NCBI GenBank assembly: GCA_035084275.1
Contig: CM068757.1
Coordinates: 5,952,001 to 6,016,000, forward strand
DNA: 64,000 nt
From: Hydrolagus colliei
Taxonomy: Eukaryota
Reading direction: 5' to 3'
Part shown: positions 1 through 62,714 of the stretch, in pieces
How the letters are laid out: the number at the start of each line of letters is the position of its first letter
Numbering within the stretch: the stretch's first letter is position 1
The notes under the pieces: model-generated
What the model was told of the DNA's origin: nothing
Seen by the model: the letters and a program-made list of their open reading frames with translations, nothing else
Databases searched by the model: none
Translations under genes and position numbers: made by a program

Positions 1-1008
1 GATTTGAGCACCAGCCACTGCACCTCCCACGTGCTTCCAGAGATCAATGAAGGGTTTTCATTCCACGTGTCGGTAGCCAAAAATGATACTATCTACATAT
101 TGGGTGGTCATTCCATAGGAATGAATCACCGTCCTCCACGACTGCTTAGCCTACAGGTCGATCTGTCAGACCCACATCCGATTATCAGCTGCACAGTCCT
201 CAACAACGGCATCTCAGTATCAAGTGCCATCGTGACCCAGGCTGGCAGCAATGAGTTTATAATTCTGGGGGGCTATGAATCGGAGACTCAGAAGCGAATG
301 GCTTGTAACACCATCCGGCTTGAAAACGACAATATTCAGATCTTGGACAAGGAACCCCCAGCGTGGACCAGTGACCTCAGAGCCAGCAAAAGTTGGTTTG
401 GCAGTGACATGGGAAACCGAGCGGTATTAATAGGCATTCCAGGGGAGAACAAGCCGGATATGGGTGAAGCAAATTACTTCTACATTGCAACTTTCGGACA
501 GCCAGAGGGGAGAAGACGCATCCTTTCCAGCCAGGAATCCTTCACTGATCCAGAGGAGTCTAGCGCATTCGAGGATTCCGAAGAATTTCGCTTTGTCGTT
601 GAAACCCATGATTATAGCGACGACGAAGTTTACTTGGATAACGGTGATGAGGAAGGTTACTGGATTAAATGCATTGTAACCTGTAGCATAAACGTCAACA
701 CTTGGGTCCCTTACTACTCCACAGAACTCAATAAACCGGCTATGATCTTCTGCTCCAGTGGAGGAGGCGGTGGGCACTGGGTACACGCCCAGTGTATGGG
801 TCTCTCAGAGTTAGAGCTGATACAGCTTTCTCAGGAGAAGACCAAGTACTTTTGCAATGTTCATTGTATTGAGAAAGGACTTGAAACCCCGCAGAGGAAG
901 ATAAAGATAATGAAACGGACGCCAATGAAATCCCCGCGTAAAAAGTCGCCGGCCAGTCTGAAGAAGACGCCGATGAAGAAGAGCTTTCTGAAGAGACTAT
1001 TTGAATGA
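1..1008 (+). CDS. RAG2: V(D)J recombination-activating protein 2, 5'-truncated by window edge (C-terminal kelch blades, acidic hinge, PHD finger)
   Basis: Frame open from base 1 to TGA 1006-1008. Motifs SFHVSVAKNDTIYILGGHS, FEDSEEF, GYWIKC-x3-C, YSTELNKPAMIFC, GHWVHAQC, YFCNVH, the CDK site TPQR and C-terminal KKSFLKRLFE are all typical of RAG2. Confidence 0.99.
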   Translation, partial: DLSTSHCTSHVLPEINEGFSFHVSVAKNDTIYILGGHSIGMNHRPPRLLSLQVDLSDPHPIISCTVLNNGISVSSAIVTQAGSNEFIILGGYESETQKRMACNTIRLENDNIQILDKEPPAWTSDLRASKSWFGSDMGNRAVLIGIPGENKPDMGEANYFYIATFGQPEGRRRILSSQESFTDPEESSAFEDSEEFRFVVETHDYSDDEVYLDNGDEEGYWIKCIVTCSINVNTWVPYYSTELNKPAMIFCSSGGGGGHWVHAQCMGLSELELIQLSQEKTKYFCNVHCIEKGLETPQRKIKIMKRTPMKSPRKKSPASLKKTPMKKSFLKRLFE

Positions 1009-8700: not shown

Positions 8701-8929
8701 CTTCCAAAGTCTTCTTGTCCAGAGGCAAGGTCTCCAAAGGGATGGTTCCCATTGTCTGGGTTTGAGATAGACCAGGTTTAAACTGCATGCTATGGGCAGC
8801 CATGGTAACCAAGGGCTCCATCGGGTAACATTTTGCCTTTGACATCTTGTCTTCCCATTCGATTTTTCTGAAAGGCACGGTTTCCGCGCACCTCGCCTTT
8901 TCAGGCATACTGCACGATGGCACCTCCAT
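5762..8929 (-). CDS. RAG1: V(D)J recombination-activating protein 1, single coding exon, 1055 aa
   Basis: ATG at 8929 (the ORF-track start at 8938 is TTG). C3HC4 RING (CQLC..CMH..CRTC..CPVC), nonamer-binding GGRPR, catalytic DDE in [16 protein letters not shown] and GNESGNK, Zn ligands CTLC and LHKTLAH, C-terminal EDSIDF. Confidence 0.99.
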
Positions 8930-9820
8930 TTGTTTCAAATGTTGACACCTACCAAAGGCATAAAAAGACGCTCTATTTAAAACCGAGTGCGTAACAATGC
9001 TCCAAGACTTAAGCTTTACCCATTATAACACACTCTCGTTCATTCCTGAAATCCTCGGGGAATTCTATTCTGCAAACCTCCATTGCAGCAAATTTTATGA
9101 TTCACTCTGCAATGCACCAAAACAGGGTGTTTCCTCCCCACCTGCCCCTGAATATATTGCTGTTGAATATAGATATAGATAACTATCTGAAGACAATTTT
9201 GCCTGTGACTCATTGTGGTATTTAGCAGCCTGTCATGTTCCATACTAATGCTGACCAGGATTTCAACGAGTTTCTTGGAAGAAAAAAGCATTAGCTGATG
9301 CAGCTGCACCATCTAGCTCCTGAACCAGTAACAACACATCTTATGTCTCATATACCGAGGGCTTATCTAGCACACACCGGAGCGTAGGAGGAGTACTGTG
9401 ATTGGAATTACCCAGTTACCACTTTTGAACTTGGCACAGCACAACATGTTTGATGTGAAGTAATCTCTGTCATTTACAAACCGCTTCAGTGAGATATAAA
9501 GGATAGCCAGCAATAGATAGCGACAAAAGGCAAAGATTTAATCAAATCTACTTTCCTTGAGTTTTCAGATGGGGGAATTTGATTTTATCCCCCCATGGCA
9601 TATTCTTCCGAAAGCATGCATTAAAAACCACATCAGTTTTGTTTATATTATTTATAATTATTCTAATATATGTAAAAAGGATGAAATGATATCTATGCAG
9701 TCAACATTGTGTGGATTACAATCTTATATATCTGCTTCCAGCTTACAATCATCCACGTTCTATTAAAAGCAAGCAACAGGAATTAAACTCTTCCAAAAAT
9801 TATCTGTAACTGTAAACAAT

Positions 9821-30300: not shown

Positions 30301-31255
30301 AGGCAAGGTACCACTAATGCCAAGAGGTGAATAACAAAGTGATCTGGAGCTGGTCAGGACACCAGTAGAAACTCCCCTTCTCCTTTACAATGGTGCGGTT
30401 GGGAAATGCTCAATATCTATCTACGTGGGGTGGGGGGGGGTGGGGGCCTCAATTCCAGACCCGGCCTCTGTCACCCTTCTCCCCACATCCCAAGGATGAC
30501 ACCTTCATTAATAATAATAATCCTTGCATTTGTTATCATTTGATATAGCGCTTTTCACGTCTTCTAGACATCTCAAAGCGTTTCACAGAATATACTGTAT
30601 ATTGTATATTGATTATATATTGTAATTGGCTGTAGGTAACACACCTCCGACAATAATGCGTTTCACCCACATACATTCAGTCAATTCACTTTACAGTGTA
30701 ATTCTGTGAAGCGCTTTGAGGCGTCTAGAAGTCGTGAAGGCTATATCCAATGCAAGGCTTATTATTCGTAGTACATGTCATTATGTTTCTATTATTGTTA
30801 TTAGTGTCACCCACCCACTCCTGTTAACGGTGTTTGGGTACACCGTGCCCCCCCCCCCCCCCCCCCCCCACACATCACCACCCCCCACCCCCACCCACCC
30901 CAGAAGGGAGTGCCAGCCGCGGACCCTGGCGGCGAGACCTCTCGGGGCGGAAACAACGGGTGCCTCGATTATCACGAAAACGGGACCAGATGTTGTTGCT
31001 GTTGTTGGTATAAGTTGTTGTTGGTTCTGAATCTATCCGAAGGTCAAACCGCGGCTCCCGGTCACACACTTTGCCGAGGGGGGAAGGGGGGGGGGGGGGG
31101 GGGGGGGGGGGGGAGAGGAGGGGGGGGGGGGGGGCGGTGATGATAACGCCCTCCCCCCCCCCCCCACCCCATTCCCACCCCCCGCGTCTCTCACCCAGTC
31201 TCCTGAGGTGACTCGCAAAGCCGGCCCGAGCGAGACCGAGCAGACTGGCCGCCAT
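27302..31255 (-). CDS. NDUFS3: NADH:ubiquinone oxidoreductase core subunit S3 (30 kDa), 261 aa, 7 exons
   Basis: Exons 31255-31195, 30133-30071, 29636-29539, 29378-29229, 28428-28303, 28109-27990, 27469-27302 (786 nt, GT-AG, in phase). [79 protein letters not shown]. Confidence 0.97.
30508..30770. mobile_element. Two inverted SINE 3' halves in NDUFS3 intron 1
   Basis: Minus copy about 30508-30600 and plus copy about 30670-30770, both with the family tail. Confidence 0.8.
30847..31190. repeat. Long poly-C and poly-G runs in NDUFS3 intron 1
   Basis: C-runs near 30847-30900 and 31150-31183; G-runs 31077-31135. Confidence 0.9.
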
Positions 31256-31620
31256 GGCAACGGAACCGGAAAGCAGCCCTTCAGCGTCCGTCCAGCAAAA
31301 GGATCCGGGCGGAGGCGGCGCGTGCTGTCCCCGTGTAAACCTCATCCCCCCCCCCCCCCCCCCCCACACTCCTCCCATCAGACAGTTAGACAGCCGTCTG
31401 GTGTCCCCGTGTAAACCTTCCCCCCACCCCACCCCTTCCTCCTCCTCCTGCCATCAGATAGTCAGTCAGTCAGGCGCCTGGTGTGTCCCCCACCCCGTGT
31501 AAACCTTCCCCCTCCATCTCCCATCAGACTGACAGACAGACAGACAGTCAGACAGACACCTGCCTGCTCTGAACGGGAGGAAACCTTTGGATCCTCAGCA
31601 CAGGCCCCCGGACGCTTTGG
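31256..31620. promoter_or_regulatory. CpG-rich bidirectional promoter region of NDUFS3/KBTBD4 with three imperfect 70-90 bp repeats
   Basis: Head-to-head genes; CCGGAA (ETS/GABP-like) near 31266; CCCCGTGTAAACC..C-run..CCATCAGA.AG repeated three times in 31325-31560; candidate KBTBD4 exon 1 donor TGG|GTGAGG at 31620/31621. Confidence 0.6.
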
Positions 31621-32315
31621 GTGAGGTGAGGGGCGTTAGACCCGGCGAAATAAACCTGATGGGATTCGAATGGAGAAAGAGGGAGGGAAGGATTAAAATC
31701 TCCCCTCCTCCAACCCCGCCCTGAAGTCCATGCTTCTGTCTCTTTCTGTCTGTCTGTCTCTCTCTCTGTCTCTCTGTGTGTGTGTGTGTGTCTCTCTGTC
31801 CGTGTGTGTCTCTTGCCTGTCTCATTTCCCAAGCCCAGTGTAAGGGAGGTTATTTTGTGGGATCTTGTCATGCTTTGTGCAAATTCTGTTACACTGTACA
31901 CACACATTCAACACACCCCTCCACCCTCCACACCCCACCCCCACAAAAAAATATAGTCACTACATCTACAGTAAATACAGTGAAATGCTTTAAAATATGT
32001 TGACTTGAATGCTCATCAAGTGCAATAGAGGCAAAAGGTTTGACAATACTTTTCCCCTTGTCTCAGGCCTTGCTTCCTCCCCAGTCCGGCTCGGAAAGGC
32101 CAAGGCTGTAATGTGTGTGTGCGTGTGAGTGAGAGAGATGGATTTGGTCACTCAATCCTCCACTCACGGTTTGTGGGCCACTAACTGTGCGCAATTGGCT
32201 TCGTCCACAAAATTCGCAGTCACTGCAATTTACAATATATTTCTGTGTTGCACTTTGCTTTGAGATGTTTCAACGATGTGATAAGGTGCTCCTATCAAAA
32301 TCAAGCATTGTTATA

Positions 32316-32600
32316 CCCTCCTCTGGGTCTGGCCTCCTCCGTGTCCCCCCGAATCCTCCGCTCCACCCTCGGCGGCCGTGCCTTCAGCCACTACGCCCCG
32401 AGGCTCTGGAATCCCTTCCTCACTCCCTTCGCCTCGCCCCCTCTCTTCCCAGTTTCAGGTCACAGCTGAAGACCTTCCTCTTCGACCGCGCTTTTGGTCA
32501 CCTTTCTACCCCTGGCTCGGTCCCGGGACCCGCTACTGTAAAGCGCTCTAAGGCGCCGTCCGGCCTGGAGGGCGCTATATAAATCAAAGTTGTTGTTATT
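32316..32600 (+). mobile_element. L2 LINE 3' fragment, preceded by a SINE 3' part at about 32175-32305
   Basis: Encodes GLLRVPRILRSTLGGRAFSHYAPRLWNP-like ORF2 end (frameshifted), QLKTFLFDRAF, tail GGCGCTATATAAAT..(TTG)n. Confidence 0.85.
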
Positions 32601-33257: not shown

Positions 33258-35765
33258 ATGGAGCCAAGTGGAGACGCAGGAGGAGCAACCATTGCTGGTC
33301 CTACAGATGAAAGTTACTTTGTGAGCTACACCTTCACGGATAAGTTACATTCGGCACGCGTTGCACAAAGTATTATGGATCTGTGCCTCGAGGACAGACA
33401 ATTTGCAGATGTTGTTATCTCTGTAGAAGGCAAAGATTTCCAGCTCCATCGGCTGGTGCTTTCTGCTCAGAGCTGCTTCTTCCGCTCCATGTTCACCTCA
33501 AACTTAAAGGAAGCTCGTAATCAGTTTATAGAACTCAAAGATGTGAATGCCAGTGTCTTTCAGCTCCTAGTGGATTATATTTATCGGGGGTCTGTAAAGC
33601 TGAGGGTAGAGGACCTTCAGGACATGTACGAGGTGGCAGACATGTACCAGTTGACCTCACTCTTTGAGGAGTGTTCTCGTTTCCTAGCTCGGACAGTCGA
33701 CGTCAGGACGTGTTTGCAGGTCATGTGGTTAGCAGATCAACACAGCGACCAGAAGCTCTACACAGCAGCAAAGCAATGTGCAAAGACACACCTGTCGCAG
33801 GTTCACCAGACGGAAGACTTCCTGGAACTGCCTTTGAGACTCCTCACAGACATCATCAAAGGTACCAGATTTTTCCATTGCAGTTTTACTTAACAATCAT
33901 ACATGGACATTTGAGGGAGCCTCAAAAGGTTAGAGAGTGTACAGGTCATTTGGGGATAAGACCTGTAGATTTCTCCAAAAGAAATGACTTTAATAATTAC
34001 AATAATCCTATCGCACTTTTCTAGACGTCTCAAAAAGCACTTCACACAATATACTGTAAAGTTAATTGACTGTACATTTGCGGGCGAAATGCGGCAAGCA
34101 ATTGCGCACATCACTCAGGTTGAGTTAAAATGTCTAAATTTCTGCCAAAATAATGCAAGGAAATTGAATAACATTTTATTTCAAAATCCTCTAGATGGTG
34201 TTCCCAGTTCTCAAAAGCCAGCAAAAGCCATAGAAGCTTGGATAGAGCACAACAAGGAAGAGCGAGCAGGACTCTCTGAGACCCTGACATCCAGCCTAAA
34301 GGTGCTGACCTTTAAAGTTTGTGAATGAATGTAAAATGGATGTTTCGTACTGACTGGAGTAAAGTTATCAAAAAATGATCCACATGGGGTTCAAAAATCT
34401 ACATTAATTTCCATAATTGTTGAGGAAGTTTGTGGTGAGATATGAGCAACCAATTAAAATTGCTAGATAAAGGGTTTACTAAATCCAACTATCAAAGCTG
34501 CTATTGGTAAAATTGCAGATACAGTAGTTCATGTAAGATGTTGAAGACTGGGACATTCTATTTTTGAGTCTTTTATTTTTATATCATCAGCCATGTACCT
34601 TTCTTGAAACAGTTGGATCAAAGCTGGTGATATAAACATGGCTTTTTGTGCCCAGTGGGTAAGCAGCCTTTGTCCTGGTTCACCAATTACAGACAGCACA
34701 TTTTGTTTCAGCCTCTCGGTTTTACTGGTGCTGCCAATATCAAACACAAAAATTCAATTAACTCTTTCACTGCTTGATATAAAACACAAACCAATCATTC
34801 TGTCTGAAAAAGAAAAAGCTATGAATCAAGTTTTTAGTCGAAAGAAGATGCAAATTGTATTAAACAGCTAATTTTACTGACCATATTGCAATTTTTGTTT
34901 CAAACAGGAGATCAGTGAAATTGTTCATATCTATCTGATTGGGAAGGAAGACACACGGACACACTCTCTGGCAGTTTCCCTGCACTGCGGTGACGACACA
35001 ATCAGTGTCAGTGGGCAGAATAGGCTTCGGCAGCAGATCACGGCTGCGTGCAAGCACGGCAGCGACCTGTACGTGGTGGGAGGCCCCATCCCGCGTCGCA
35101 TGTGGAAGTGCAATATGGAGACGATGGACTGGGAACAGTGCGCATCCCTGCCAAGAGATCGCCTTCACCACACACTGGTGTCCGTGCCGAGTGAGGGTGC
35201 CATTTACTCACTGGGCGGCAAAACCCTCCAGGATACACTCTCCAGTGCGATCATGTACTACCAAGTGCGTGATAACGTTTGGGTGGAGACCAATCAACTT
35301 GACACGGCAGTTTCATCTGCCGCGGGTGTCAACCTTAACGGGACAATCTATCTTCTGGGCGGAGAGGAGAATGACCTGGACTTCTTTACAAAACCATCCC
35401 GTCTCATCCAGTGCGTTGACACGCAATCGAGGACGTGCCACTTGAAGTCATACCTCCTTCCCTTCGCCGGGCGAATGCACGCAGCCATTCACAAGGACTT
35501 GATCTTTATTGTGGCCGAGGGCGATTCTTTAGTGTGCTACAATCCGCTACTTGACAGCTTCACGAGACTGCGTTTCCCAGAGGTTTGGAGCCGTGTTCCC
35601 TCCCTCTGGAAGATCGCAAGCTGCAACGGCTGTATCTATGTATTCAGAGACAAATGTAAAAAGGGGGATGCCAATACATTAAAACTGAATCCTGCCACGT
35701 CTGTGGTTTCAGTGATACGTGGATTTGAGATACTGTTGACAAATTGGCAGTTTGTCTTGGCTTGA
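33258..35765 (+). CDS. KBTBD4: Kelch repeat and BTB domain-containing protein 4, 522 aa, 3 coding exons
   Basis: Exons 33258-33861, 34195-34301, 34908-35765 (1569 nt, in phase). BTB FQLHRLVLSAQSCFFRSMFTSNLKEA; kelch LYVVGGPIPRRMWKC, GGEENDLDFFTKPSRLIQC; C-terminal LLTNWQFVLA. Confidence 0.98.
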
Positions 35766-38283: not shown

Positions 38284-41200
38284 CTATGGTGTGCTGCGAG
38301 ATTCCACTAAACACAGTTCTTCATAGTAATGATTCAGGACTTTAAACTGGCCATGGTGAACAATGATGTGAGGTCGGATAGAAGCAATATAATCGCAGGC
38401 CTTTTCTGGACTCCAAAGATGCAGCTGAAAGGCAGGCAGGCAGGACAGGAATTAACCTTAATTAGAAGTGATGGGAAACCCTCGAAAATCTTTTTATTCA
38501 GAAAAAGTTTGATTTCCTTAAAACGATTGACACATATATACTGATATATTTTAGTTGTGTTGCTGCTAGGAGTCTAATGAGACCCCTTCCCCACAGCTGC
38601 TGGTGTACATAACAAGCAAAATCAGCAACCGCTTTGAGTCAAGTCCAGATGAATTCACATTTTTATTTGAGAACTCTGCAACTGCACAAAATCACGAAGC
38701 CGGTGGCTTTACTGTGACTGATATTTGAATCACGAATATAAAAAGTGGGAGCAGTAGGCCATTCGGCCCATCGAGCCTGCCCCGCCATTCAATCATGGCT
38801 TTTGGTTTCTCCAACCAGGGGAAACAATCTCCCACTATCAACTTTTATTATTTTATTTTATTGTCCCCTTAATAATCTTATAGGTTTCTATATATTAAGG
38901 AAATATCTAATTATATTATATCTAATTCTTCTATATTCCAGAGAATATAGGCTCAAATTAATCAACCTATCATCATAACTCATCTCCCTCATGCCAGGAA
39001 CTAACCTAGTAAACCTACGCTGCACTCCCTCCAAGGCAAGTACATCCTTTCTTAAATAAGGAGACCAAAACTGCACACAGTATTCCAGGTGCGGTCTCAC
39101 CAGGGTCCTATACAGCTGCAGCAAGACTTCCCTACTCTTATACTTTAACCCTTTCATAATGAAAGCTAACATACCGTTAGCCTTCCTAATTGCCTGCTGC
39201 ACCTGCATACTAACTTTCTATGTTTGGTGTACAAGGACACCCAAGTCCCTCTGGATGGTAACACTTTCTAATCTCTCCCCCTCTAAAAAATAACCCGCTC
39301 TACTGTTTTTGCCACCTAGGTGGATGACTTCACACTTAAAGAGTCTTCTGGAGTGATTTTTAATGTTCAATGTAAAATTAAACAAATATCTTTGATCGAA
39401 TATTTCTCAATTGCTTTAGAAATATTCATTCAGGTCTAAATTCCAAAAGCTGATTGTCAAGATCAGCTGCTATTGAAAATACCTGAATTAAATATGCTGC
39501 CACCATGGTGGCACTGCGGGATCGGCCAGCCTTGCAGTGCACATACACACTGTTTCCATCTTTGCGGTGTTTTACAAGAAAATGGACACCCTTCTTGAGA
39601 TTCTCTAATGTCGGGACTCCAGTGATATCAATGGTGCTGAGACGCAATTGCTCCACACCAAGCCCATGCCATTCCTGAAACACAAACTTAAAATCAGGCT
39701 TCAATACAGAAAAAAGACAACTGACAAGAAATTGTTATCCTGTTAGAAACTGTGGAGCAAAGTGAAGGAATTTCTTTGCTTAGAGGGTTATTAGGGTTTG
39801 GTATATATTACCACAGGTGGCTACAGAAGCTAGATTAATATTCAAATTCAAAAGGATATAAACTGGATAAGCACCTGAATAAGACAATTGTTACGGAATA
39901 TGGAAAAGGTGCTGGAAAGTGAGATTTATTAAAGAAAACATGATTTATAAAAACTGCAGTAGTGCAAAAATAATAATGGAAATCCCCCAGGGCTGAAAAT
40001 GTGTTTCCAGTCAGTTGACAGCACAAACTCTGCCATGTTAATTTCAGTTCAACAAGCTAAAATGTCAACAAAAATATAAATCCAATAGTAAGGAGTAAGC
40101 AATTACATCCAGAAAACGTGCAGGGCATAAATCATTCAACTAAAAGCTTAAGCAGTTTCCACCTGCTTTTTAAATCCACTGTCTATGTTATACTTCTCCA
40201 CATTTCTTAAGACTTTTTTGTATTATTCGGCAGTGATTTTGTGTTTAGACACTTGGTTCATCCCACAGTCCCTCCGCCTCGCCCCCTCCCTGGCCTCTTT
40301 CAAGTTGCTCCTCAAGACCCTCCTCTTCGACGGTCCCTAGTCACCCCAAATCCCCCTTTCCCTCCACGTTCCCAACTCGACAGCACCTTGAGACATCCTC
40401 CTGACGTGAGAAGTGCACTATAGAAGTGTAATTTTGTTATTGTTGTTCATGATTAGTGTCTCAGATCAAGTGGTACATGGAACTGACACTACAGTAGATG
40501 ACAAAGTATACCTAATAATAATATAGGCCTCAGTAACAGCAGGTCAATTACTAATGCAACACAATTGGGGGTAGCAGATGAATAAGAAATAACAACATTT
40601 ATGCGCATAATAATCACAATGTTTGCACGTTTTACAGTTCACGTCAGCAGAAAAAGCTCCCCAAGGCATAGGTCCTTCAACTGATGAAGAACGTCTGCTT
40701 TAATTTGGTTTCAGGCAACTATTGCTTCCATTTGATTTTGCGCCTTCATGTCTGGTAGATAGTCTTACCGTAAAGTGTAGTGACTGCATGCAATAGATTT
40801 CATTTGTTTTAAGCTCACCTCAGCTGAATTAACGAAGAACTTGGTTTCATATTCTTCATTCATGGTGATCACTCCTCGCACATTCTCATTTTTTACTAAC
40901 TAAAAAAAAGACAAAAAACGTAGTTAGTTCTCTTTGTTCAAAGAAAATTAATATATTCCATTACATCTGAACACAATTCCCTAAAAAATGTGTTTTGCTG
41001 CATAATAATCTTTGCATTTGATAAAGCAGCTTTCAAGTCAGGGGAGCGTCTCAAAGCGCTTGACTGGATTTTACTGTGAAATGTAGTGATTGTGTATTTT
41101 GTAGGTAAACACTGTCGCTAATTTGTGCGCTGCAATACCTCACAAACAGCTGGGAATTGAATGATCAATTATTATTTCTGGGGGCTTTCTAGCCAGAATA

Positions 41201-41870
41201 CCAGAAGTTCCCCTTCCATGTGTCTGTGTGTGTGTGTGTGTGGAGGGGTGGTGACATTAACCAGTGTGTGTATGTGTGTGGGGGGGGGGGGGGTTGACAT
41301 TGACCTGTGTCTGTGTGTGTGTGTGTTGGGGCTGTGTTAGTGTGTGTAGGCAGTGTGTGTGGGGGGGGGGGGGGGGGGGGAAGGGACTGTGTGGTGGGGG
41401 GGAACTGTGTGTGTATGGGAGGAGGGACTGTGTTAGTGTGGGGGGGCGGGCGGAGGGGACTGTGTATGTGTGTGGTGGTGTGGGACTGTATGTGTGTGGT
41501 GGGGGGGAAAGGACTGTATGTGTGTGTATGGTGGGGGGGGGGAAACTTTGTGTGTGTGTTGGGGGGGGGACTGTGTATGTGTGTGGTTGGGGGGAGGGAA
41601 GGGACTGTGTGTGTGTGGTTGGGGGGAGGACTGTATATGTGTATGTGTGTGGTTGGGGGGAGGGAGGGAAGGGACTGTGTGTGTGTGTTGGGGGATGGGG
41701 CAGAGGCTCAGCCTGGCTCCTACCTCCTGGGTGAGGGAGCGGAAGGGCAGCGCCCCCAGAATCACCGTCTCGTCGATCCTATCGTACCAGTGTCGGCCGT
41801 AGACCTTGGTCATGAGGACATTGTACAGGAGAGTGGGGTAGAAGACAACCCGAGCCAGGACTCCCGCCAT
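38284..41870 (-). CDS. PTPMT1: Mitochondrial phosphatidylglycerophosphatase / protein tyrosine phosphatase 1, 186 aa, 4 exons
   Basis: Exons 41870-41724, 40899-40819, 39674-39483, 38424-38284 (561 nt, in phase). [35 protein letters not shown], intact active site [22 protein letters not shown]. Confidence 0.96.
38735..39290 (-). mobile_element. CR1 LINE 3' fragment in PTPMT1 intron 3
   Basis: ORF 38888-39208 [53 protein letters not shown] is the CR1 ORF2 C-terminus; 3' end GGGCCGAATGGCCTACTGCTCC near 38745-38770. Confidence 0.92.
41221..41700. repeat. GT/G-run minisatellite in PTPMT1 intron 1
   Basis: About a dozen variable units of GGGACTGT(GT/AT)n..TGG(T)TG-run. Confidence 0.9.
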
Positions 41871-42019
41871 CCCCCGGGCCCCGCATCCCGCCCAAAACAC
41901 ACTTCCGGTGACAAGCCAGGGACCCCGGATGAGTCCTCGGAGCATGCGCAATGTCGCTCCCCCCCCCCCCCCCCCCCCCCCACCCGCATTGGCTTGTCAT
42001 TGGATCCTGAGCATCAACA

Positions 42020-42910
42020 ACAATAATAACAACATGATAACCACAAGAACAATAATATCAACAACAACATAAATAACAATATCAACAATATCAATAATAT
42101 CAACAATAATAACAACAATAATAATAACGACAACAACAAAATTACATTTATGGAGCGCCTTTCACCTCGGGAGGACGTCCCAAGGTCGGGACCCGAGCGG
42201 ACGATTGCGCACAGCGGTGTCCCACAAACTGTCGTGGATTGAAAGGAACTATTTATTATTGTTTATGTTTCTTTTCCTCTTGAGGGATATATCGTAGCGC
42301 ACCCAGGTTTCTCGCTTGCGAGGCGTGCGCTCTGACCACTGAGTTACAGGCCTCCACATGACATTTGTATAGTGTGTTTCACGTTGGGAGGATGCCCCAA
42401 GCTGCTGGATGGTCAGAGTTTTGGACCTGAACTGGAGATCAGGGAAGGTGGAGGGGAGGTGGCGAGGGGGGGCTGTGGTGGAGTGGTTTTGAATGATAGC
42501 ACGGTCAAAGTGGAGGGTTTTGAGGGGGGACTTGAAGGAGTTTAGGGAGAGGGCTTGTTTTCTTGTCTCCACATCCCTCCACTTACCTCTCTCATCTCTC
42601 TCCTCACAACAGTACCCATTGCCTTCGCTCTACTGGGTCTGGCCTCCTCCTTGTCCCCGAATCCTTCGCTCCACCATAGTGCCTTCAGCCACTACGCCCC
42701 GAGGCTCTAGAACTCCCTTCCTTACACCCTTCACCTCGACACCTTCTCTTCCTACTTTCAGGTCTCGGCTAAAGACCTTTCTTTTTGACCGCGCTTTTGG
42801 TCACCTTTTTCCCCTTTCCCCTGGCTCGGCCCCGGGATCCGTTATTGGGAAGCACTCTGAGACGCCACCCGGCATGGAGGGCACTATGTGAATCCAAGTT
42901 GTTATTGAGG
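42020..42910. mobile_element. Cluster of SINE/L2 fragments upstream of PTPMT1, including a long (AAC/AAT)n tail and inverted L2 pieces
   Basis: (AAC/AAT)n 42020-42140; L2/SINE tail to 42240; SINE head about 42297-42357 (-); L2 about 42400-42560 (-) and 42615-42907 (+). Confidence 0.8.
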
Positions 42911-53804: not shown

Positions 53805-54240
53805 CTTTGATAGTAATCCTGCATTTGGAATAGAGCCTTATCACGTCAGAAGGATGTCTCAAAGTGTTTCACAGGATCATTATTATTATTTACTGTGGAG
53901 TGATGGTGCATTTGCAGGCAAATATGGCAGCACGATTGTGCACAGCAATGTCCCACAAACAACTGTGGAGTGGGTGACTAATTTTATTAGGGGGATTGTT
54001 GGCGAGGACACTGGAAGAGAGAAACTCCCTTCTCTTTTCAAATAGTGCCAAGGGATCTTCAACATCCACCTGAACAGGCAGATGGGACCACCATTTAACA
54101 TCTCATCTGAAGCACCTTCAACATTGCAATACCCCCCAGCACTGCTTTGTATTTTAGACTAAGTGAGTTCAAGGCCCAACTTGGGATTCGAACCCACAAT
54201 CTTCTGACTCTGAGGCGAGGTAACCAATGAGTCAAGCGAA
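53805..54240 (-). mobile_element. Longer (approx. 430 bp), more decayed Deu-domain SINE subfamily copy
   Basis: Tail, Deu core and an extra internal segment (GGATCTTCAACATCCACCTGAACAGGCAGATGGG..TTTAACATCTCATC), ending in GAACCCACAATCTTCTGACTCTGAGGCGAG; related pieces at 21640-21805 and 23540-23725. Confidence 0.75.
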
Positions 54241-55374: not shown

Positions 55375-57726
55375 CTATAAAGTTGTCTCATATTCTACAA
55401 TTCTCTGGTTTCCAGCTACGCAGGGTGAGCTCCGATCAGAGTACCTCTGGTTATTCTCCCTTTGCCACACTTCGCCATTTGTGGAATTAACGTCAACTTT
55501 GATTTCATCTTCCGTGTCATACTCAGTTAAGACTTCTTCACCATTTGCCTCAAGAATACATTCAGATCCTTGCATTGTGTGACTTTGCTCCGTGGTTTGC
55601 TGCAAGACGTATAAAACAGCATCGTGGACACTGTTGAAAGTAAAGGTTTGTTTGGTGGTTTTGAAGTAATCGTGTTCTCTTAAGCCATTTAAAACTGCGT
55701 TAGAACAACTGGTGAGGACAAAGTCAATCCCTTTACATTGGTATTCCTTAAACAAGCATATTAGACCTTTAGCCCCTGCATCATCTATAAAACTAATTGA
55801 TCCACAATCCAAAATGACAGTATGTACGTTAGCAATATGTATGGATCTTCTGTGTCTGTACAGCGCTGTGTGACTAATCCGCCTCAGTGCATTTTCATCC
55901 AATGCAAGGAATTGCGTGGATTCCCGTAACATATTATCTTTGTCTTCTTCACTGTACGCGGCACTCTCAGCTCTCGAATTCCCGCTGGGCAGAAGCGAAC
56001 TACTCACTTTGCGTTTCACCCAGGCCAAAAAAAAATCAACGTTGCCATAATAAACAGAATCGAAGGTTTTTATCATTTTAATTCCCAGTATCTCTTTGGC
56101 GGACTTCTCGAAGGACAAGTCGGTGTAGGTCTCTGTGTTGGGAATGTGGCCCAATATGGCAATCGAAGGTCTTTGAAGTCTGTGGAGAGCGAGCAAAAGG
56201 GAAAAGAATACACCAACTGCTAAACCAATATCAATCCCGAGGAGACACACCGAGGCAAATGTAACAATTCCCGCCAGAAAATCGTATTTGTTCCTCCTGC
56301 ACACAAAACAGTACTTCCTGAAGAACTCAAAGTAACAACCCAGGTTTGCGATTACAATCGCACCGAGGACAGTTTTGGGCACAAGTGGAAGGAAGAATTG
56401 GCCGCAGCACAGAGCAGTAAGGCAAAGACTTGCCGCTACCAAGCCTGAGCCTTGGGTTTGACCCCAACCTTTTCCTTGCACCACTGTTTGCTCACAAACT
56501 CCAGAGACGGCAAAAGCACCCAGAAACGAGAGGACCAGGTCACAAAACCCTAAAACCACAGTCTCGCGATGCGGGTGATAACTCTGACTGTGCTTTTTGG
56601 AGATCTCATTCCCCATTGAGGAACTCACGACAAAAGTCACCAATGCAATGGAAACAGCATCTGCGATAACACTGGCTATTAAGGAGAGCGAAGGGAGGAC
56701 GAGCTGCGGGGCAGTAAATGGATGGCTGTTTATCAGCCGGAAATTATAGTTGTCCTCCAGATCCAACCAGAATGTCATCCCGATGGCGATAGCCATGACA
56801 ATGAACTCTATGGGTAAGAGATGCCTACTGTAATTATAGTTTATTACCTTCAAAGGAATCAGAAATGCTAATGTGGCTATACCAGTAATGAGAGAGCCAA
56901 TGTTTATTTCATCACTTTCAATGAGATCCTTGAGAGTGTAGACAAGTGCCAACGGGCCATGATGGATTGAACCGTCAACACCAAGCAATATGGTCAGCAG
57001 GATGATTATTAAATTAATAGCCGTCCCTGCTTTGAAGCCATCCATGACGGGCTTGGAGATGTACATCCGCAGGAAACTCAGGCGGAAAATCCCCATTAAA
57101 ATCAAAATCGTTCCAGAGACACAAGTGAGAGTAACCACATGCAGCTCCCTTGAGCATTTTGGAGAACAGTCGCTGTCAGAAACAAGCTCCTCGGATTCCA
57201 TGTGGCCAACGTGTTTGGCAACGAGCAAAGCAGTGAATGCAGACGCACCGTAGGACATGTGTTGCGTTGTTCCAAGCAAGCAATATAAGACTGTAGTGAT
57301 CAAACTTGTGTAGAGTCCATTAATAGCTGGCTGCCCTGCAATGACTCCATATGCCAGGGATAACGGAATAGTTAAAAGGCCCACACTGAGTCCCGACAAT
57401 AGGTCGCCCAACAACCATGTTTTGACTTTGTACCCATAAAACCAATTAAGGAAAGGGAATGTGCTCCAAACCAGCTTCTTTACATTGTGCGAGACCGGTA
57501 AATTTAGCTCAGAAATCCTGCTCTCATATTTGGCCAGTTTTTCTTCATTATGGCCATCTAAGCGTTCACAGTACGGGATGCTGAGAGTGAATGACACTCG
57601 ATGTGCTGTCTTCTTATTGAAGTTGTAGTTCCTGTCGGTTCTGATCAGAGGGACACTCGAACCGGACGGATCTTGAATGACATCGCTGGACCAGAAGGAT
57701 TCTGAACTTCCCAACGTATTTGCCAT
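55375..57726 (-). CDS. Intronless divergent SLC26 (SulP) family protein with STAS domain, 783 aa
   Basis: ATG 57726 in strong context (ACCACGATGG). FPFLNWFYGYKVKTWLLGDLLSGLSVG, GLYTS..LYCLLGTTQHMSYG, QTQGSGLVA, VPKTVLGAIVIANL, DFLAGIVTF..LLGIDIGL, LQRPSIAILGHIPNTETY; STAS HTVILDCGSISFIDDAG. Subfamily not assignable by eye. Confidence 0.93.
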   Translation of the reverse strand: MANTLGSSESFWSSDVIQDPSGSSVPLIRTDRNYNFNKKTAHRVSFTLSIPYCERLDGHNEEKLAKYESRISELNLPVSHNVKKLVWSTFPFLNWFYGYKVKTWLLGDLLSGLSVGLLTIPLSLAYGVIAGQPAINGLYTSLITTVLYCLLGTTQHMSYGASAFTALLVAKHVGHMESEELVSDSDCSPKCSRELHVVTLTCVSGTILILMGIFRLSFLRMYISKPVMDGFKAGTAINLIIILLTILLGVDGSIHHGPLALVYTLKDLIESDEINIGSLITGIATLAFLIPLKVINYNYSRHLLPIEFIVMAIAIGMTFWLDLEDNYNFRLINSHPFTAPQLVLPSLSLIASVIADAVSIALVTFVVSSSMGNEISKKHSQSYHPHRETVVLGFCDLVLSFLGAFAVSGVCEQTVVQGKGWGQTQGSGLVAASLCLTALCCGQFFLPLVPKTVLGAIVIANLGCYFEFFRKYCFVCRRNKYDFLAGIVTFASVCLLGIDIGLAVGVFFSLLLALHRLQRPSIAILGHIPNTETYTDLSFEKSAKEILGIKMIKTFDSVYYGNVDFFLAWVKRKVSSSLLPSGNSRAESAAYSEEDKDNMLRESTQFLALDENALRRISHTALYRHRRSIHIANVHTVILDCGSISFIDDAGAKGLICLFKEYQCKGIDFVLTSCSNAVLNGLREHDYFKTTKQTFTFNSVHDAVLYVLQQTTEQSHTMQGSECILEANGEEVLTEYDTEDEIKVDVNSTNGEVWQRENNQRYSDRSSPCVAGNQRIVEYETTL

Positions 57727-59644
57727 CGTGGTGATATTCCCTTGGTTTCTTCTTCTTTGTTCTCTGATGCATAGATCAGAGATGCAATCCAGTGAACTAA
57801 ACACAAGACAGAGAAAAGTAAGCTTTACCCTTTTCAATTCGTGTTTTTAATTTTTTTGCAGTAACGACAGTACAATATTGTTCAATATTGTTATTGAATA
57901 CAAAGGGTTTCAAATTCTGATTGGGGAAAGGTTTCCACTGTTGACGCAAATAACATTTGTGTCTGCAGTGTTGAGAGATAAAGCTCTGAGAAACTATCCT
58001 GGGTGATGGACGCTATATAAGTGCAAGCTGTTTTAGAACACCTACTGAAAAGGGGTGGTGGGGTGGAAATGGGAGGGAATATACTACTTTCTACTTTCAC
58101 ATGTGGCAAGACAGTAGAACAAGAGGAAGCAGAGTTAAAGATACAATTTTAATATAAAGCAATTTCAAGATAGACACCCATGCTATTTTACCTGGGTGGT
58201 GGTGGTGGAGGGGAGGGGGTTGGGCAGGGTGGGTGGGTGGAGAGAGAGATTACAAAGAGCAATTAAGTGAATACTTTTTTAGTGGGGAGATCTCTGGATC
58301 CGCAAGTTCATCAAACACAATAAGCCCTTTCAGCTGGAAATTTGTGATAAACTGGGCCTGTCAGACTCTCGGGAACTCGAGGCAAATGGTTGTGAGAAGT
58401 TTGAATGTACTGGATGTACATTTAGAAAGCAAATGGTGAATAAGCCACTGTGTTGTCATGCAAACAAACAAGTAAGAGAATCAGACAACAGCCATAAAAT
58501 AAAAATCACAACTTAACTTCCAGGCACAGCTTTCTGTTTATAACACTGCAGCTGCAAAGCACAGCACGGTGCAAAGGCTTAACATGCAACAGGACAAACA
58601 TAACAGACTCCCATTAGCCTGCTGGAACTATCAATCCGCCCTCGTAACCAATTAATCTCAAGTCATATCTATAGGGTTTATTTAATATTTTATATTGGCC
58701 CCGTTATAGGAGTGGAAATAGTAATAATGGAAACAATTTTATTTCTTCAATAAACAGTAAATCTCTTAGCAGTAAAATTTACTTTTAAGAAGAATACATT
58801 GTCAACAGCAATGCCCCCTCAGTGCTCAATCGTGGCGGAGTATGTTATTACGATCTTCAGCAAGGGTGAAAGAATTGCCAGTAATTTACAGTCCCCAGTG
58901 ACAGATTCTATTTGCCTCATACATATGATAGAAGCCAAAGCTGCCTAATAAATTGTGCAAACACTTGCAAACACATGTGAAAGAATACTGTTGTGCATTA
59001 TGAAATCACCACTTTACCAAAGAGCTGGAAAACCGTGCACTCGAACTCTAGTTGTTAACCCAATGAATAAAGGATTTTCACAATCTAAAGGAATTAAGTT
59101 GCCAGTTATGAATAAAATACCATCTGTCACATTTTTGACTCCTTTTTTCCCCACTTACCCACTTTGCTGGATTTCTATCTGCTGTGTTTATGCTCATCAG
59201 GGCGGCTGAGGTGGTGTGTACGTTAATGCAATGATAGCCTGGAAGATGAGTCTCAGAAAGAGAGTTTTGAAGATCAATTGTAGTATCCCTAATAAGGGCT
59301 AATGTGTAGGCTCCAATCTCTGCCAGAAATAGACATGATATCTTAGGCTGTTCGTAACCACTTCTAGAACAGCTGGGGTTTCCTATCAACTGTCTGCTGC
59401 CAAAGTTCCACTCTCGGCATTTAAGTATCGCTCAAACAGGTTAAATGTCTGTGGGTTGTGTTTTTGAAAAATATATTAAGGATAAATCAAATAGTTCATA
59501 TGTCAGGAAAATGCATAACCTATTACAGTATATTCATACTTGAACACAATTAGCCTTGCCATATTCAATTATTCCATATTTTGAATGTGTTGTTATAATT
59601 TAGCACAATTTAAGTAAACAAATAAAAACAACTTTACGCTAAAT

Positions 59645-61581: not shown

Positions 61582-62137
61582 AACAACAACAACAACAATT
61601 TACATTTATATAGCGCCTTTCACGTCGGGAGGACGTCCCAAGGCGCTGAACAAGAGGCGTGTGACCCGAGCTGGGAGGGGAGTGTTTGGGAAGGGGTGAA
61701 ACACGAAGGGGAGGTAAAAGAGTTCGGGGTGGAACAAAAGGCACGATCGAAGAGGAAAGTCTTCAAACCGGCCTTGAAAGAGGAAAGGGAAGAGGCGAAA
61801 CGGAGGGATTGAGGGATGGCATTCCATAAGGTGGGAGCGGAGAAACTGAAGGCCCGGCCTCCGATGGTGGGGCGGTTCGGGCGGGGGGCTTGGAGCAGGC
61901 CAAGTCCTGTTGAACGGAGGGTCCGGGTGGGCGTGTAGGGGTAGAGTAGATCGGTTAGGTAGGATGGGGCAAGGCCGTGTAAGGCCTTGTAGGTGAGGAC
62001 GAGGATCTTAAACTCGATCCTCTGGAGGATGGGGAGCCAGTGGAGACGGGCGAGGGTGGGGGTTATGTGGTCACGGAGGCGGGTGCGGGATAGTACACGG
62101 GCTGCAGAGTTTTGGATGGCCTGCAGCCTATGAATGG
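61582..62137 (-). mobile_element. 5'-truncated L2 LINE with uninterrupted ORF2 C-terminus
   Basis: 171 open codons 62135-61623: HRLQAIQNSAARVL..RDHITPTLARLHWLPILQRIEFKILVLTYKALHGLAPSYL..GGRAFSFSAPTLWN..FKAGLKTFLFDRAF; TGA 61620-61622; (TTG)n tail. Confidence 0.93.
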
Positions 62138-62714
62138 AGGAATGGAAGAGGGTTAGGTGAGGGGGAGGAGGTGGAGGTGACTGAGGACACGGTCAAAAAG
62201 GAAGTTCTTGAGGTGGGCTTTGAATGAGGCAAGGGAGGGTGCAAGGAGGAGAAGCTCTGGGTTGGAGTTCCAGAGGGTGGGGGCAGGCAGGCTGAAGTCC
62301 TGACCGTCGATAGTGGACCAGACAGAGCAGGGGATGTGGAGCAAGCCAGAACCTGCAAGGTATTAAACAGAGTACTGCATTAAACTTGCCCACTCTGGTG
62401 GCCTTTAAAGATCTCCTGGCACTATTTCAAAGAAAATCAAGGAATTCTCCCTGTGTTCAGTCCAACTTTGTTCCCTCATCCACCCAAATAATTGGCCATT
62501 CATTCGATTGTTTGCAAGAATTGTCTGGTGCAAATTGGCCGTTATGGTTTGGTTACATAATAAGTGTTATTACAACTAATATCTCATTTTGCGAAGGTCT
62601 TTGAGATGATTTCAGCATGATAAGCATGAAATGTCTCTGATTTGCACAATATCATTATCTAAAATAAGGCAGTTTTTTTTTAACTAGTTAATAAAAGCTT
62701 GATGTTTTACTTAC

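What the first reader, a model, noticed from the sequence alone, without database searches (positions are those of the whole stretch)
56488..57363. The SLC26 anion-binding pocket is rewritten: Q to L, F to S, S to E, R to Q
Seen, by gap-free alignment to recalled prestin motifs: TM1 P-L-SLAY (Leu 57361-57363, prestin Q97); TM3 G-A-S-AF (Ser 57241-57243, F137); TM10 FAVSGVC-E-Q-TVVQ versus FSISCSL-S-R-SLVQ (Glu 56491-56493 = S398, Gln 56488-56490 = R399); the TM9 NQE motif is HRE. Established: these residues form the anion site, and acidic substitutions at S396/S398 have been used to mimic a bound anion in prestin. Inference: not a conventional Cl-/HCO3-/SO4 exchanger. It could be a non-transporting STAS scaffold (e.g. 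CFTR regulator), an anion-independent voltage sensor, or a carrier for a neutral or cationic substrate.
Basis: partly seen in the sequence, partly recalled or inferred. Interest (0 to 1): 0.7.

Follow-up and report, generated by a model that had tools for sequence, protein, structure and literature searches.

The report
Shark-lineage SLC26 transporter with rewritten pocket
This chimaera gene encodes an SLC26 membrane transporter found only in sharks, rays and chimaeras, whose anion-binding pocket has lost its positive charge and gained a built-in negative one, so it probably no longer works as an ordinary chloride/bicarbonate/sulfate exchanger.

Summary
Window 55378-57726 (-) is one uninterrupted 783-codon reading frame for an SLC26 protein (Sulfate_transp + STAS). 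Gap-free alignment to solved prestin structures gives Q97->Leu122, F137->Ser162, S398->Glu412 and R399->Gln413.

Glu at position 412 occurs in 0 of 228 other SLC26/SulP proteins. All five residues are invariant in 25 cartilaginous-fish sequences.

The gene is not prestin. It is a paralogue known only from cartilaginous fishes (every other protein <=34% identical) on a very long stem branch (about 2 substitutions/site). Its coding sequence is a single exon in all five genomes checked, against at least 14-16 exon blocks in prestin and SLC26A6. dN/dS is 0.15-0.27, and the pocket-bearing core domain is as constrained as STAS.

An AlphaFold model (TM domain pLDDT >90) keeps the SLC26 fold. Ser162 and Glu412/Gln413 sit at the starts of the TM3 and TM10 half-helices.

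Best reading, inferred: a working elevator-type carrier whose site holds a tethered carboxylate, so it is not a coupled inorganic-anion exchanger. A scaffold role or a pH-gated/uncoupled anion path remains open. A prestin-like voltage sensor is disfavoured. No paper describing this clade was found.

The parts
55375..57726 (-). Complete coding sequence of the SLC26-like protein: 783 codons from ATG 57726-57724, stop at 55377-55375, no intron
   Evidence: ORF list; Pfam Sulfate_transp 4e-62 and STAS 4e-10; 90% identical to Callorhinchus 'prestin-like' XP_007885825
56263..57414 (-). Transmembrane (Sulfate_transp) domain, residues 105-488
   Evidence: Pfam; AlphaFold block pLDDT mostly >90 with 14 TM helices; Foldseek to prestin, SLC26A6 and pendrin, TM-score (target) 0.78-0.84
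57361..57363 (-). Leu122 (TM1), the position of prestin Q97
   Evidence: Gln in 181/228 relatives and Leu in 11; invariant in 25 cartilaginous-fish sequences
57241..57252 (-). Tyr159-Gly160-Ala161-Ser162, strand-to-helix turn at the start of TM3; Ser162 = prestin F137, Ala161 = P136
   Evidence: DSSP strand 159-160 then helix from 163; Tyr159 and Ser162 invariant
56488..56499 (-). Val410-Cys411-Glu412-Gln413 at the start of TM10 = prestin S396-L397-S398-R399
   Evidence: Glu 0/228 and Gln 3/228 in relatives; DSSP strand 408-409 then helix 411-419; V, E and Q invariant while 411 is C or W
56563..56571 (-). His386-Arg387-Glu388 in place of the family's N-Q-E motif (TM9 start); Glu retained, Asn->His across the clade
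56539..56541 (-). Asp396 in TM9, a second acidic residue new to the core domain (Asn in 72% of eukaryotic relatives, Asp in 2%)
55618..56100 (-). STAS domain (residues 543-703) with a disordered insert at about 581-631
   Evidence: Pfam; model; dN/dS 0.15
55378..55395 (-). C-terminal E-Y-E-T-T-L; EYE[T/S]xL is invariant. It has the form of a class I PDZ-binding end (S/T-x-hydrophobic)
   Evidence: the PDZ reading rests on the established motif definition and was not tested
57556..57726 (-). N-terminal 57 residues, predicted disordered yet conserved
   Evidence: pLDDT <50; dN/dS 0.16
57727..57798 (-). 5'UTR part of the coding exon, preceded by a polypyrimidine tract and AG (57798-57797): probable splice acceptor
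   Evidence: sequence; similarity to Heptranchias continues 43 nt upstream of the ATG. Inference
59157..59382 (-). Conserved upstream block ending in TGG|GTAAGTG (GT at 59158-59157): probable non-coding exon 1 with its splice donor
   Evidence: blastn window 59143-59341 to Heptranchias L001 5830-6027, 73%; the donor heptamer is identical in both species. Inference, no transcript evidence

Best explanation
SHOWN. The gene encodes a full-length SLC26/SulP-fold protein: a 14-TM domain, a STAS domain and a PDZ-type C-terminus. It belongs to a paralogue group known only from cartilaginous fishes, has a single-exon coding sequence, and is under purifying selection. Every side chain that defines the family's anion site has been replaced and then frozen: Q->L (TM1), P-F->A-S (TM3), S-L-S-R->V-C/W-E-Q (TM10), with an extra Asp in TM9.

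INFERRED mechanism. The Glu412 carboxylate sits where the transported anion normally sits, at the focus of the TM3 and TM10 helix dipoles. It acts as a tethered counter-charge, a natural version of prestin S398E. With the arginine gone, the core domain's site changes from electropositive to neutral or negative. The protein therefore no longer binds and exchanges Cl-, HCO3-, SO4 or oxalate in the coupled way of SLC26A3/4/6. Because the elevator architecture and the pocket itself are both tightly conserved, I take it to be still a working carrier, with the carboxylate site serving a proton- or cation-linked or uncharged polar substrate. It would probably sit in an epithelial membrane, held by PDZ scaffolds.

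How likely: identity and 'not a conventional coupled anion exchanger', about 0.75. The specific 'still a carrier, with a non-anionic or H+/cation-linked substrate', about 0.4.
For: Family and fold: Pfam, PDB phmmer, AlphaFold pLDDT >90 in the TM domain with the half-helix geometry kept, Foldseek to prestin/A6/pendrin/A9/A2.
Uniqueness of the pocket: 0/228 Glu at 412, 3/228 Gln at 413, unique combination.
Fixation: L122, Y159, S162, V410, E412, Q413, H386 and D396 are invariant in 25 sequences from chimaeras, sharks, skates and rays, while only 43% of TM-domain columns are invariant.
Selection: dN/dS 0.15-0.27 in all pairs. The core domain (0.16) is as constrained as STAS (0.15) and more than the gate domain (0.21). 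95 of 122 family-conserved columns are retained, including the structural Gly/Pro and the NQE glutamate.
Literature: the TM10 Arg is needed for antiport in A4 and A6. S398E substitutes for bound anion in prestin.
Restricted distribution and long stem branch, pointing to a change of function.
Against: No functional or expression data exist; the only transcript-like contigs found are colinear with the genome. Invariance of Glu/Gln is equally expected if the carboxylate is purely structural, stabilising the TM3-TM10 gap, in a protein that does not transport. No candidate substrate is indicated by anything tested. SLC26A9 shows that a site without Arg can still pass Cl- rapidly, so anion conduction is not excluded. 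Model coordinates could not be inspected, so side-chain orientation, pKa and proximity of Asp396 to the site are unknown. Divergence is spread over the protein (27/122 conserved columns changed), not focused only on the pocket.
Confidence: 0.4

Rival explanations
1. Non-transporting regulatory or scaffold subunit. The tethered carboxylate simply keeps the TM domain folded. The protein acts through its STAS domain, conserved disordered N-terminus and PDZ-type tail, for example as a partner of CFTR or of other SLC26 proteins in secretory epithelia.
For: The anion site is dismantled. The EYE[T/S]xL C-terminus is invariant. STAS and the disordered N-terminus are strongly conserved (dN/dS 0.15-0.16). 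Anion occupancy is reported to fold and stabilise this site in prestin (PMC10699807), so a built-in anion could be purely structural.
Against: The TM core is as constrained as STAS, and several pocket and pathway positions are frozen for no obvious anchoring reason. No interaction data exist.
Confidence: 0.27
2. Still an anion pathway, but uncoupled and/or pH-gated. With the Arg gone, as in SLC26A9, anions pass without exchange. Glu412 competes with the anion for the site and releases it when protonated, by analogy with the gating glutamate of CLC exchangers (analogy from established knowledge).
For: SLC26A9 (Val), an Anolis A8 (Thr) and cod A10 (Thr) also lack the Arg. R399V or R404V confer small uncoupled Cl- transport on prestin and A6, and A9 needs Val393. 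The helix-dipole geometry is retained in the model.
Against: All those Arg-less paralogues keep Gln (TM1), Phe (TM3) and Ser/Ala at 412. None has an acidic residue there. Here Q, F and both Ser are gone as well, and a second acidic residue (Asp396) is added to the core.
Confidence: 0.2
3. Prestin-like voltage sensor or motor that no longer needs a bound anion.
For: Best PDB sequence matches are prestins. Prestin S398E keeps nonlinear capacitance and becomes salicylate-insensitive.
Against: Not a prestin orthologue: the ML trees place it outside A5, and the AU test for a sister relation to A5 is borderline (p 0.056). R399V abolishes NLC. Voltage dependence is reported to need both the negative and the positive charge, and the positive one is Gln here.
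Confidence: 0.05
4. Decaying retrocopy with no function of its own.
For: Intron-less coding sequence; dismantled family active site; no expression evidence found.
Against: Intact full-length ORFs in 25 sequences across all major cartilaginous-fish lineages. dN/dS 0.15-0.27 with dS up to 1.6. A conserved upstream block with an identical splice donor.
Confidence: 0.02

Closest known systems
Prestin (SLC26A5), including the engineered S398E / S396E mutants
   Same: Highest-scoring solved structures (E 6e-99 to 7e-87, about 27-32% identity). Same 14-TM + STAS architecture. Glu412 is the natural counterpart of the S398E 'fixed charge instead of bound anion' mutant.
   Different: Not an orthologue. 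Single coding exon against at least 14 exon blocks. Lacks R399, Q97, F137 and S396. Has a PDZ-type C-terminus.
SLC26A6 / SLC26A3 / pendrin (coupled anion exchangers)
   Same: Same fold. The tree places the clade next to the vertebrate A3/4/5/6/8/9 group. The C-terminal S/T-x-hydrophobic end resembles the PDZ-binding ends known for A3 and A6 (established knowledge).
   Different: The exchangers keep Q/F/S/S/R, and their Arg is required for antiport. A sister relation to A6 is rejected by the AU test (p 0.004).
SLC26A9 (uncoupled, channel-like Cl- transporter)
   Same: Also lacks the TM10 arginine (Val393), showing that the family tolerates loss of this charge.
   Different: A9 keeps Gln (TM1), Phe (TM3) and Ser at the 412 position. 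It has no acidic residue in the site.
Cation-coupled members of the same 7+7 fold (bacterial SulP such as BicA; NAT/SLC23 nucleobase carriers with Glu/Gln at the start of TM10)
   Same: Acidic or amide side chains at the TM3/TM8/TM10 substrate site go with Na+/H+ coupling or uncharged substrates (recalled knowledge). 29 of 228 surveyed relatives carry Asp/Glu at the TM3 position 162.
   Different: Those SulP proteins keep the TM10 Arg. No sequence relationship to NAT proteins beyond the fold. This is a resemblance only and was not tested.
slc26a12 (the most recently named vertebrate SLC26 member)
   Same: Another lineage-restricted vertebrate SLC26 paralogue with few introns, recognised only from genome comparison (PMC11145369, PMC12357937).
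   Different: slc26a12 belongs to the A1/A2 branch, is absent from cartilaginous fishes and has two coding exons. Those papers do not mention the clade described here.

Membership tests
SLC26/SulP superfamily | Sulfate_transp (PF00916) membrane domain | tested here: met
   E 4e-62, profile positions 1-379 of 380
SLC26/SulP superfamily | C-terminal STAS domain | tested here: met
   PF01740 E 4e-10; matches prestin STAS structures
SLC26/SulP superfamily | 7+7 inverted-repeat fold with TM3 and TM10 half-helices meeting mid-membrane | tested here: met
   AlphaFold model with strand-helix breaks at 159-163 and 408-411; Foldseek TM-score (target-normalised) 0.78-0.87 to SLC26 structures
SLC26/SulP superfamily | Canonical anion-site residues (TM1 Gln, TM3 Phe or hydrophobic, TM10 Ser/Ala followed by Arg/Lys) | tested here: not met
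   L122, S162, V410, E412, Q413; combination not seen in 228 relatives
SLC26/SulP superfamily | Anion transport activity | not testable with these tools
   Needs flux or electrophysiology
Prestin (SLC26A5) orthologue group | Groups with A5 in phylogeny | tested here: inconclusive
   ML trees place it outside A5 on a branch of 1.6-2.1 subs/site; constraining it with A5 costs 20 lnL units, AU p 0.056
Prestin (SLC26A5) orthologue group | Multi-exon gene structure shared by A5 | tested here: not met
   One tblastn block in shark and skate loci, against 14 in a teleost prestin gene
Prestin (SLC26A5) orthologue group | R399 and S398 in the voltage-sensing site; nonlinear capacitance | tested here: not met
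   Residues are Gln and Glu; capacitance itself cannot be tested here
SLC26A6 orthologue group | Groups with A6 in phylogeny | tested here: not met
   AU test rejects, p 0.004. A separate Callorhinchus protein (P0087) with the canonical Q/F/S/S/R pocket falls in the A6 group
Retrogene (processed copy) | Coding sequence without introns while relatives are multi-exon | tested here: met
Retrogene (processed copy) | Identifiable parent gene, poly(A) remnant, target-site duplication | tested here: inconclusive
   Parent not resolved. Poly(A) remnant and duplications were not looked for and are expected to be erased at this age. A 5'UTR intron appears to have been acquired

The most novel reading that the evidence does not exclude
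This is the first SLC26 protein whose substrate is not an anion: a carboxylate-centred site (Glu412, Asp396, Gln413, Ser162, Tyr159, with Leu/Val/Trp lining) that carries a cation or a small polar osmolyte. Because the gene is known only from cartilaginous fishes, it could be tied to their urea/methylamine (TMAO) osmotic strategy or to ammonium/proton handling. It would also be a 400-million-year natural experiment on the 'tethered anion' idea from prestin research.
Probability: 0.12. Interest if true: 0.85.

Novelty: new variant of a known kind. Interest (0 to 1): 0.62.

Why it matters
SLC26 proteins are defined as anion transporters. Their substrate site (two helix dipoles plus Gln, Phe, Ser and Arg) is the basis of current models of exchange, uncoupled conductance and prestin's electromotility. 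Here evolution has swapped every side chain of that site, installed the Glu that experimenters use to mimic a bound anion, removed the Arg, and kept the result unchanged across chimaeras, sharks and rays.

Characterising the protein would show what an SLC26 elevator does when its site carries its own charge. That bears directly on the open question of how anion occupancy, R399 and voltage sensing are linked. It could also uncover a transport or regulatory function specific to cartilaginous-fish physiology. In addition, it adds an undescribed, retrocopy-like member to the vertebrate SLC26 family, currently labelled 'prestin-like' by automatic annotation.

Tried and rejected
1. Prestin orthology. 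The 'prestin-like' label reflects best-hit similarity only; the trees and the AU test do not place the clade inside A5.
2. Pseudogene. Rejected by intact ORFs and dN/dS.
3. 'Loss of Arg proves loss of anion transport'. Rejected, because A9, an A8 and an A10 lack it too.
4. Orthologues outside cartilaginous fishes. A word-index search and an exhaustive HMMER scan of 1.84 billion representatives found nothing between 34% and 90% identity.
5. Canonical cartilaginous-fish prestin. I searched with a teleost prestin, but the 120 rows listed were all teleost, so this was uninformative. P0087 (Callorhinchus, A6 group, canonical pocket) stands in instead.
6. Transcript evidence. Two Logan contigs from skates are colinear with the genome and retain the putative intron, so they say nothing about expression.
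7. Literature searches for this clade found no description.
8. AU tests for a sister relation to A1/A2 or A10 did not finish in the time allowed.
9. Model coordinates are not exposed by the tools, so pocket distances, the Glu412 rotamer and the position of Asp396 relative to the site could not be measured. Only DSSP boundaries and Foldseek scores were available.
Full report
**What is at the coordinates**

The minus strand of window 55375-57837 is one open reading frame. From the first ATG (57726) it encodes 783 residues with a Sulfate_transp domain (E 4e-62, residues 105-488) and a STAS domain (E 4e-10). phmmer against all PDB chains gives prestin as the best match (E 6e-99 for the thermostabilised human construct, 3e-90 to 7e-87 for human, gerbil and dolphin prestin). 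SLC26A6, pendrin, A2, A1, A3 and A9 follow.

- Leu122 (57363-57361) = Q97
- Ser162 (57243-57241) = F137
- Glu412 (56493-56491) = S398
- Gln413 (56490-56488) = R399
- His386-Arg387-Glu388 = N-Q-E

I checked each codon in the raw sequence.

**Is it more than chance?**

I aligned the protein with 239 relatives: 11 close ones, 150 representatives from an exhaustive HMMER scan, and bacterial and other eukaryotic SulP proteins. I then tabulated the pocket columns. The register is anchored by Pro121 (209/228 others), Gly160 (218/228) and Arg at column 413 (203/228).

| Column | This clade | 228 other proteins |
|---|---|---|
| 412 | Glu | never Glu, Asp once |
| 413 | Gln | Gln in 3 |
| 122 | Leu | Leu in 11, Gln in 181 |
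| 162 | Ser | mostly Phe (118); Ser not among the eight commonest residues |
| 410 | Val | Val in 1 |
| 386 | His | His not among the eight commonest residues; Asn in 175 |

No other sequence has the combination. Named paralogues all keep Gln and Phe (Tyr in one A8, Met in the amphioxus protein): A4, A5, A6, A8, A9, A10, the A1/A2-type sulfate transporters, an amphioxus and an acorn-worm protein. SLC26A9 (Val), an Anolis A8 (Thr) and a cod A10 (Thr) do lack the arginine. The unusual features are therefore the glutamate and the completeness of the rewrite, not the loss of Arg alone.

**What gene is this?**

It is not prestin. The close homologues are all 'prestin-like' predictions from cartilaginous fishes: 90% identity to Callorhinchus milii and 62-70% to sharks, skates and rays. 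The next best proteins are only 27-29% identical. A scan of 1.84 billion cluster representatives found only that one cluster; everything else is at most 34% identical. The window therefore comes from a chimaera other than C. milii.

Cluster look-ups extended the set to 25 sequences from about 23 species, covering holocephalans, hexanchiform, squalomorph, heterodontiform, lamniform, carcharhiniform and orectolobiform sharks, skates, stingrays, mantas and a sawfish.

In a FastTree of 162 proteins and an IQ-TREE (LG+C20) of 48, the clade has 100% support and follows the species tree. It sits on a stem of 1.6-2.1 substitutions per site. It attaches weakly (80-86) beside the vertebrate A3/4/5/6/8/9 group. 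Paralogues were identified by source names.

AU tests gave:
- sister relation to A6: rejected (p 0.004)
- sister relation to A5: borderline (p 0.056)
- sister relation to the A5+A6+cyclostome group: not rejected (p 0.27)

The parent lineage is unresolved, and the long branch makes any placement unsafe. A separate Callorhinchus protein (P0087) with the canonical Q/F/S/S/R pocket falls in the A6 group. Chimaeras therefore have conventional members as well.

**Gene structure**

The coding sequence is a single exon in the window and in Heptranchias, Amblyraja, Carcharodon and Mobula; the gene range equals three times the protein length plus the stop. tblastn gives one block in shark and skate. It gives 14 blocks in a teleost prestin gene and 16 in a bat SLC26A6 gene.

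Just upstream of the ATG there is a polypyrimidine tract and AG (57798-57797). About 1.4 kb further upstream, a block conserved with Heptranchias (window 59143-59341, 73% identity) ends in an identical TGG|GTAAGTG. I read this as a non-coding exon 1 spliced to a single coding exon. This is an inference; no spliced transcript was available, and the two Logan contigs from skates are colinear with the genome.

An intron-less coding sequence in a family whose nearest relatives have many introns is the hallmark of a processed retrocopy. The long stem followed by a slow crown fits rapid change after such an event. The alternative, an ancient paralogue that lost its introns and was lost elsewhere, is not excluded.

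**Is it functional?**

Nei-Gojobori dN/dS is 0.15-0.27 in all ten pairs of five species, with dS up to 1.6. By region:

| Region | dN/dS |
|---|---|
| Core domain (TM1-4, TM8-11), which carries the pocket | 0.16 |
| Gate domain | 0.21 |
| STAS | 0.15 |
| Disordered N-terminal 57 residues | 0.16 |
| C-terminal tail | 0.25 |

In 25 sequences, L122, Y159, S162, V410, E412, Q413, H386, E388 and D396 are all invariant, against 43% invariant columns in the TM domain. Neighbouring positions vary: 161 is A/M/T, 411 is C/W and 414 is T/S. The C-terminus EYE[T/S]xL is invariant.

Of 122 columns conserved at 70% or more in eukaryotic relatives, 95 are retained and 27 are changed and fixed. The changed ones include Q122L, R413Q, N386H, N396D, S242I, G421W, W476C and W486G. 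They are enriched in TM5 (6 of 12) and TM9 (4 of 8). The pocket rewrite is thus part of a broader remodelling, but the scaffold of the fold is kept.

**Structure**

An AlphaFold2 model built on a 60-sequence alignment has mean pLDDT 78, with the TM domain mostly above 90. It has the family's characteristic strand-then-half-helix elements. Strand 159-160 is followed by a helix from 163, so Ser162 lies at the N-cap of TM3. Strand 408-409 is followed by helix 411-419, so Glu412 and Gln413 lie in the first turn of TM10.

Foldseek against the PDB returns prestin, A6, pendrin, A3, A9, A2, A7 and A11 with target-normalised TM-scores of 0.71-0.87. I could not inspect coordinates, so side-chain orientation is untested.

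**What the literature says about these positions**

Q97, F101, P136/F137, S398 and R399 form prestin's anion site. S398E keeps nonlinear capacitance while abolishing salicylate sensitivity, and S396E behaves similarly (PMC8755724). S398E is described as a fixed charge that stands in for the bound anion. Prestin's voltage dependence is said to need both that negative charge and R399, and anion binding folds the TM3/TM10 termini (PMC10699807).

The TM10 basic residue is required for antiport in pendrin (R409) and A6 (R404). It is Val in the uncoupled A9. R399V abolishes prestin NLC, and R399V or R404V confer small uncoupled Cl- transport (PMC11078650). The two recent papers on vertebrate SLC26 gene content (slc26a12; intron turnover in slc26a1/a2) do not mention this clade. 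Searches for a description of it found nothing.

**Mechanism**

Shown: an SLC26 fold with the elevator architecture intact, and a substrate site whose net charge has moved by about minus two (Ser->Glu, Arg->Gln). The shift is about minus three if Asp396 is near the site. The polar and aromatic anion ligands are replaced by Leu, Ser and Val, all frozen under purifying selection.

Inferred: the Glu412 carboxylate occupies the dipole focus as a tethered anion. Coupled exchange of inorganic anions is lost. The protein remains a carrier because the core and pocket are constrained as tightly as the regulatory domains, and the carboxylate site serves a proton- or cation-linked or uncharged polar substrate. 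The PDZ-type tail suggests an epithelial membrane complex.

I put about 0.75 on 'not a conventional coupled anion exchanger' and about 0.4 on the carrier-with-new-substrate reading. The rivals are:
- a non-transporting STAS/PDZ scaffold in which the carboxylate is purely structural (0.27)
- an uncoupled or pH-gated anion pathway with Glu412 as a protonatable competitor of the anion (0.2)
- a prestin-type voltage sensor (0.05, disfavoured by the missing Arg)
- a functionless retrocopy (0.02, contradicted by selection)

**Novelty and verdict**

The protein passes every membership test for the SLC26/SulP superfamily except the one that defines its chemistry, the anion site. It is an undescribed lineage-restricted paralogue, not an orthologue of any numbered SLC26 gene as far as the data can tell. 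I class it as a new variant of a known kind. It is of real interest to transporter and prestin specialists, because it is a natural, long-fixed version of the mutants used to probe the role of the bound anion. Function remains to be measured.

Noticed in passing
window 4-1008 (+) and 5762-8938 (-): The RAG locus. The C-terminal part of RAG2 (Pfam RAG2 3e-77 plus RAG2 PHD) runs off the window start. A complete single-ORF RAG1 of 1058 aa (Pfam RAG1 E=0) lies convergent with RAG2.
   Followed up: partly
window 33258-33893 and 35073-35765 (+); 41433-41951 (-): KBTBD4 exons: BTB/BACK, then Kelch repeats; PDB KBTBD4 3e-92. Also a probable first exon of PTPMT1 (only PDB hit is PTPMT1 3rgq, E 0.009, weak). 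The SLC26-like gene therefore lies about 13 kb from a KBTBD4-PTPMT1 pair and about 47 kb from RAG1.
   Followed up: partly
window 53999-54086; Heptranchias L001 19371-19457: A short non-coding block conserved between chimaera and sevengill shark (78% over 90 nt), downstream of the SLC26-like gene. It lies 1.3 kb after the stop here and 7 kb after it in the shark. It could be a 3'UTR end or a regulatory element.
   Followed up: no
window 57556-57726 (-), protein residues 1-57: The N-terminus is predicted disordered (pLDDT <50), yet its sequence (MxxxLGSSESFWSSD..DPSGS..PL.RTDR) is strongly conserved across cartilaginous fishes (dN/dS 0.16). This suggests a short linear interaction or phosphorylation motif.
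   Followed up: partly
window about 57154-57177 (-), protein residues 184-191: The TM3-TM4 extracellular loop carries invariant D184, S185, Cys187 and Cys191, where prestin has its N-glycosylation sites. This may be a clade-specific disulfide or metal site. A nearby invariant His255-His256-Gly257 sits in the loop after TM5.
   Followed up: no
window about 55840-55870 (-), STAS insert: A basic R-R-x-S-type site (YRRRISKQ in most sharks, YRHRRSIH here) lies in the otherwise disordered STAS insert. It has the form of a PKA-type phosphorylation site (motif reading from general knowledge).
   Followed up: no
window 41200-42050 and 30875-31432: Long GT/G-rich low-complexity tracts give spurious Gly/Cys/Val-rich ORFs on both strands around the PTPMT1-like exon and upstream of KBTBD4.
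   Followed up: no
window about 61600-62400 and about 63560: Repeated SINE-like elements end in '...GGCGCTATATAAATGTAA' followed by (TTG)n, upstream of the SLC26-like gene. Related ORF fragments recur at 32187-32582 and 42493-42891 ('...LKTFLFDRAFGH...').
   Followed up: no
L007, L008 (Logan contigs SRR17051962, SRR089296): Two skate contigs of about 3 kb carry the orthologue and are 98.7% identical to Amblyraja radiata. They are colinear with genomic DNA, including the putative intron, so they are genomic or unspliced and give no expression evidence.
   Followed up: yes
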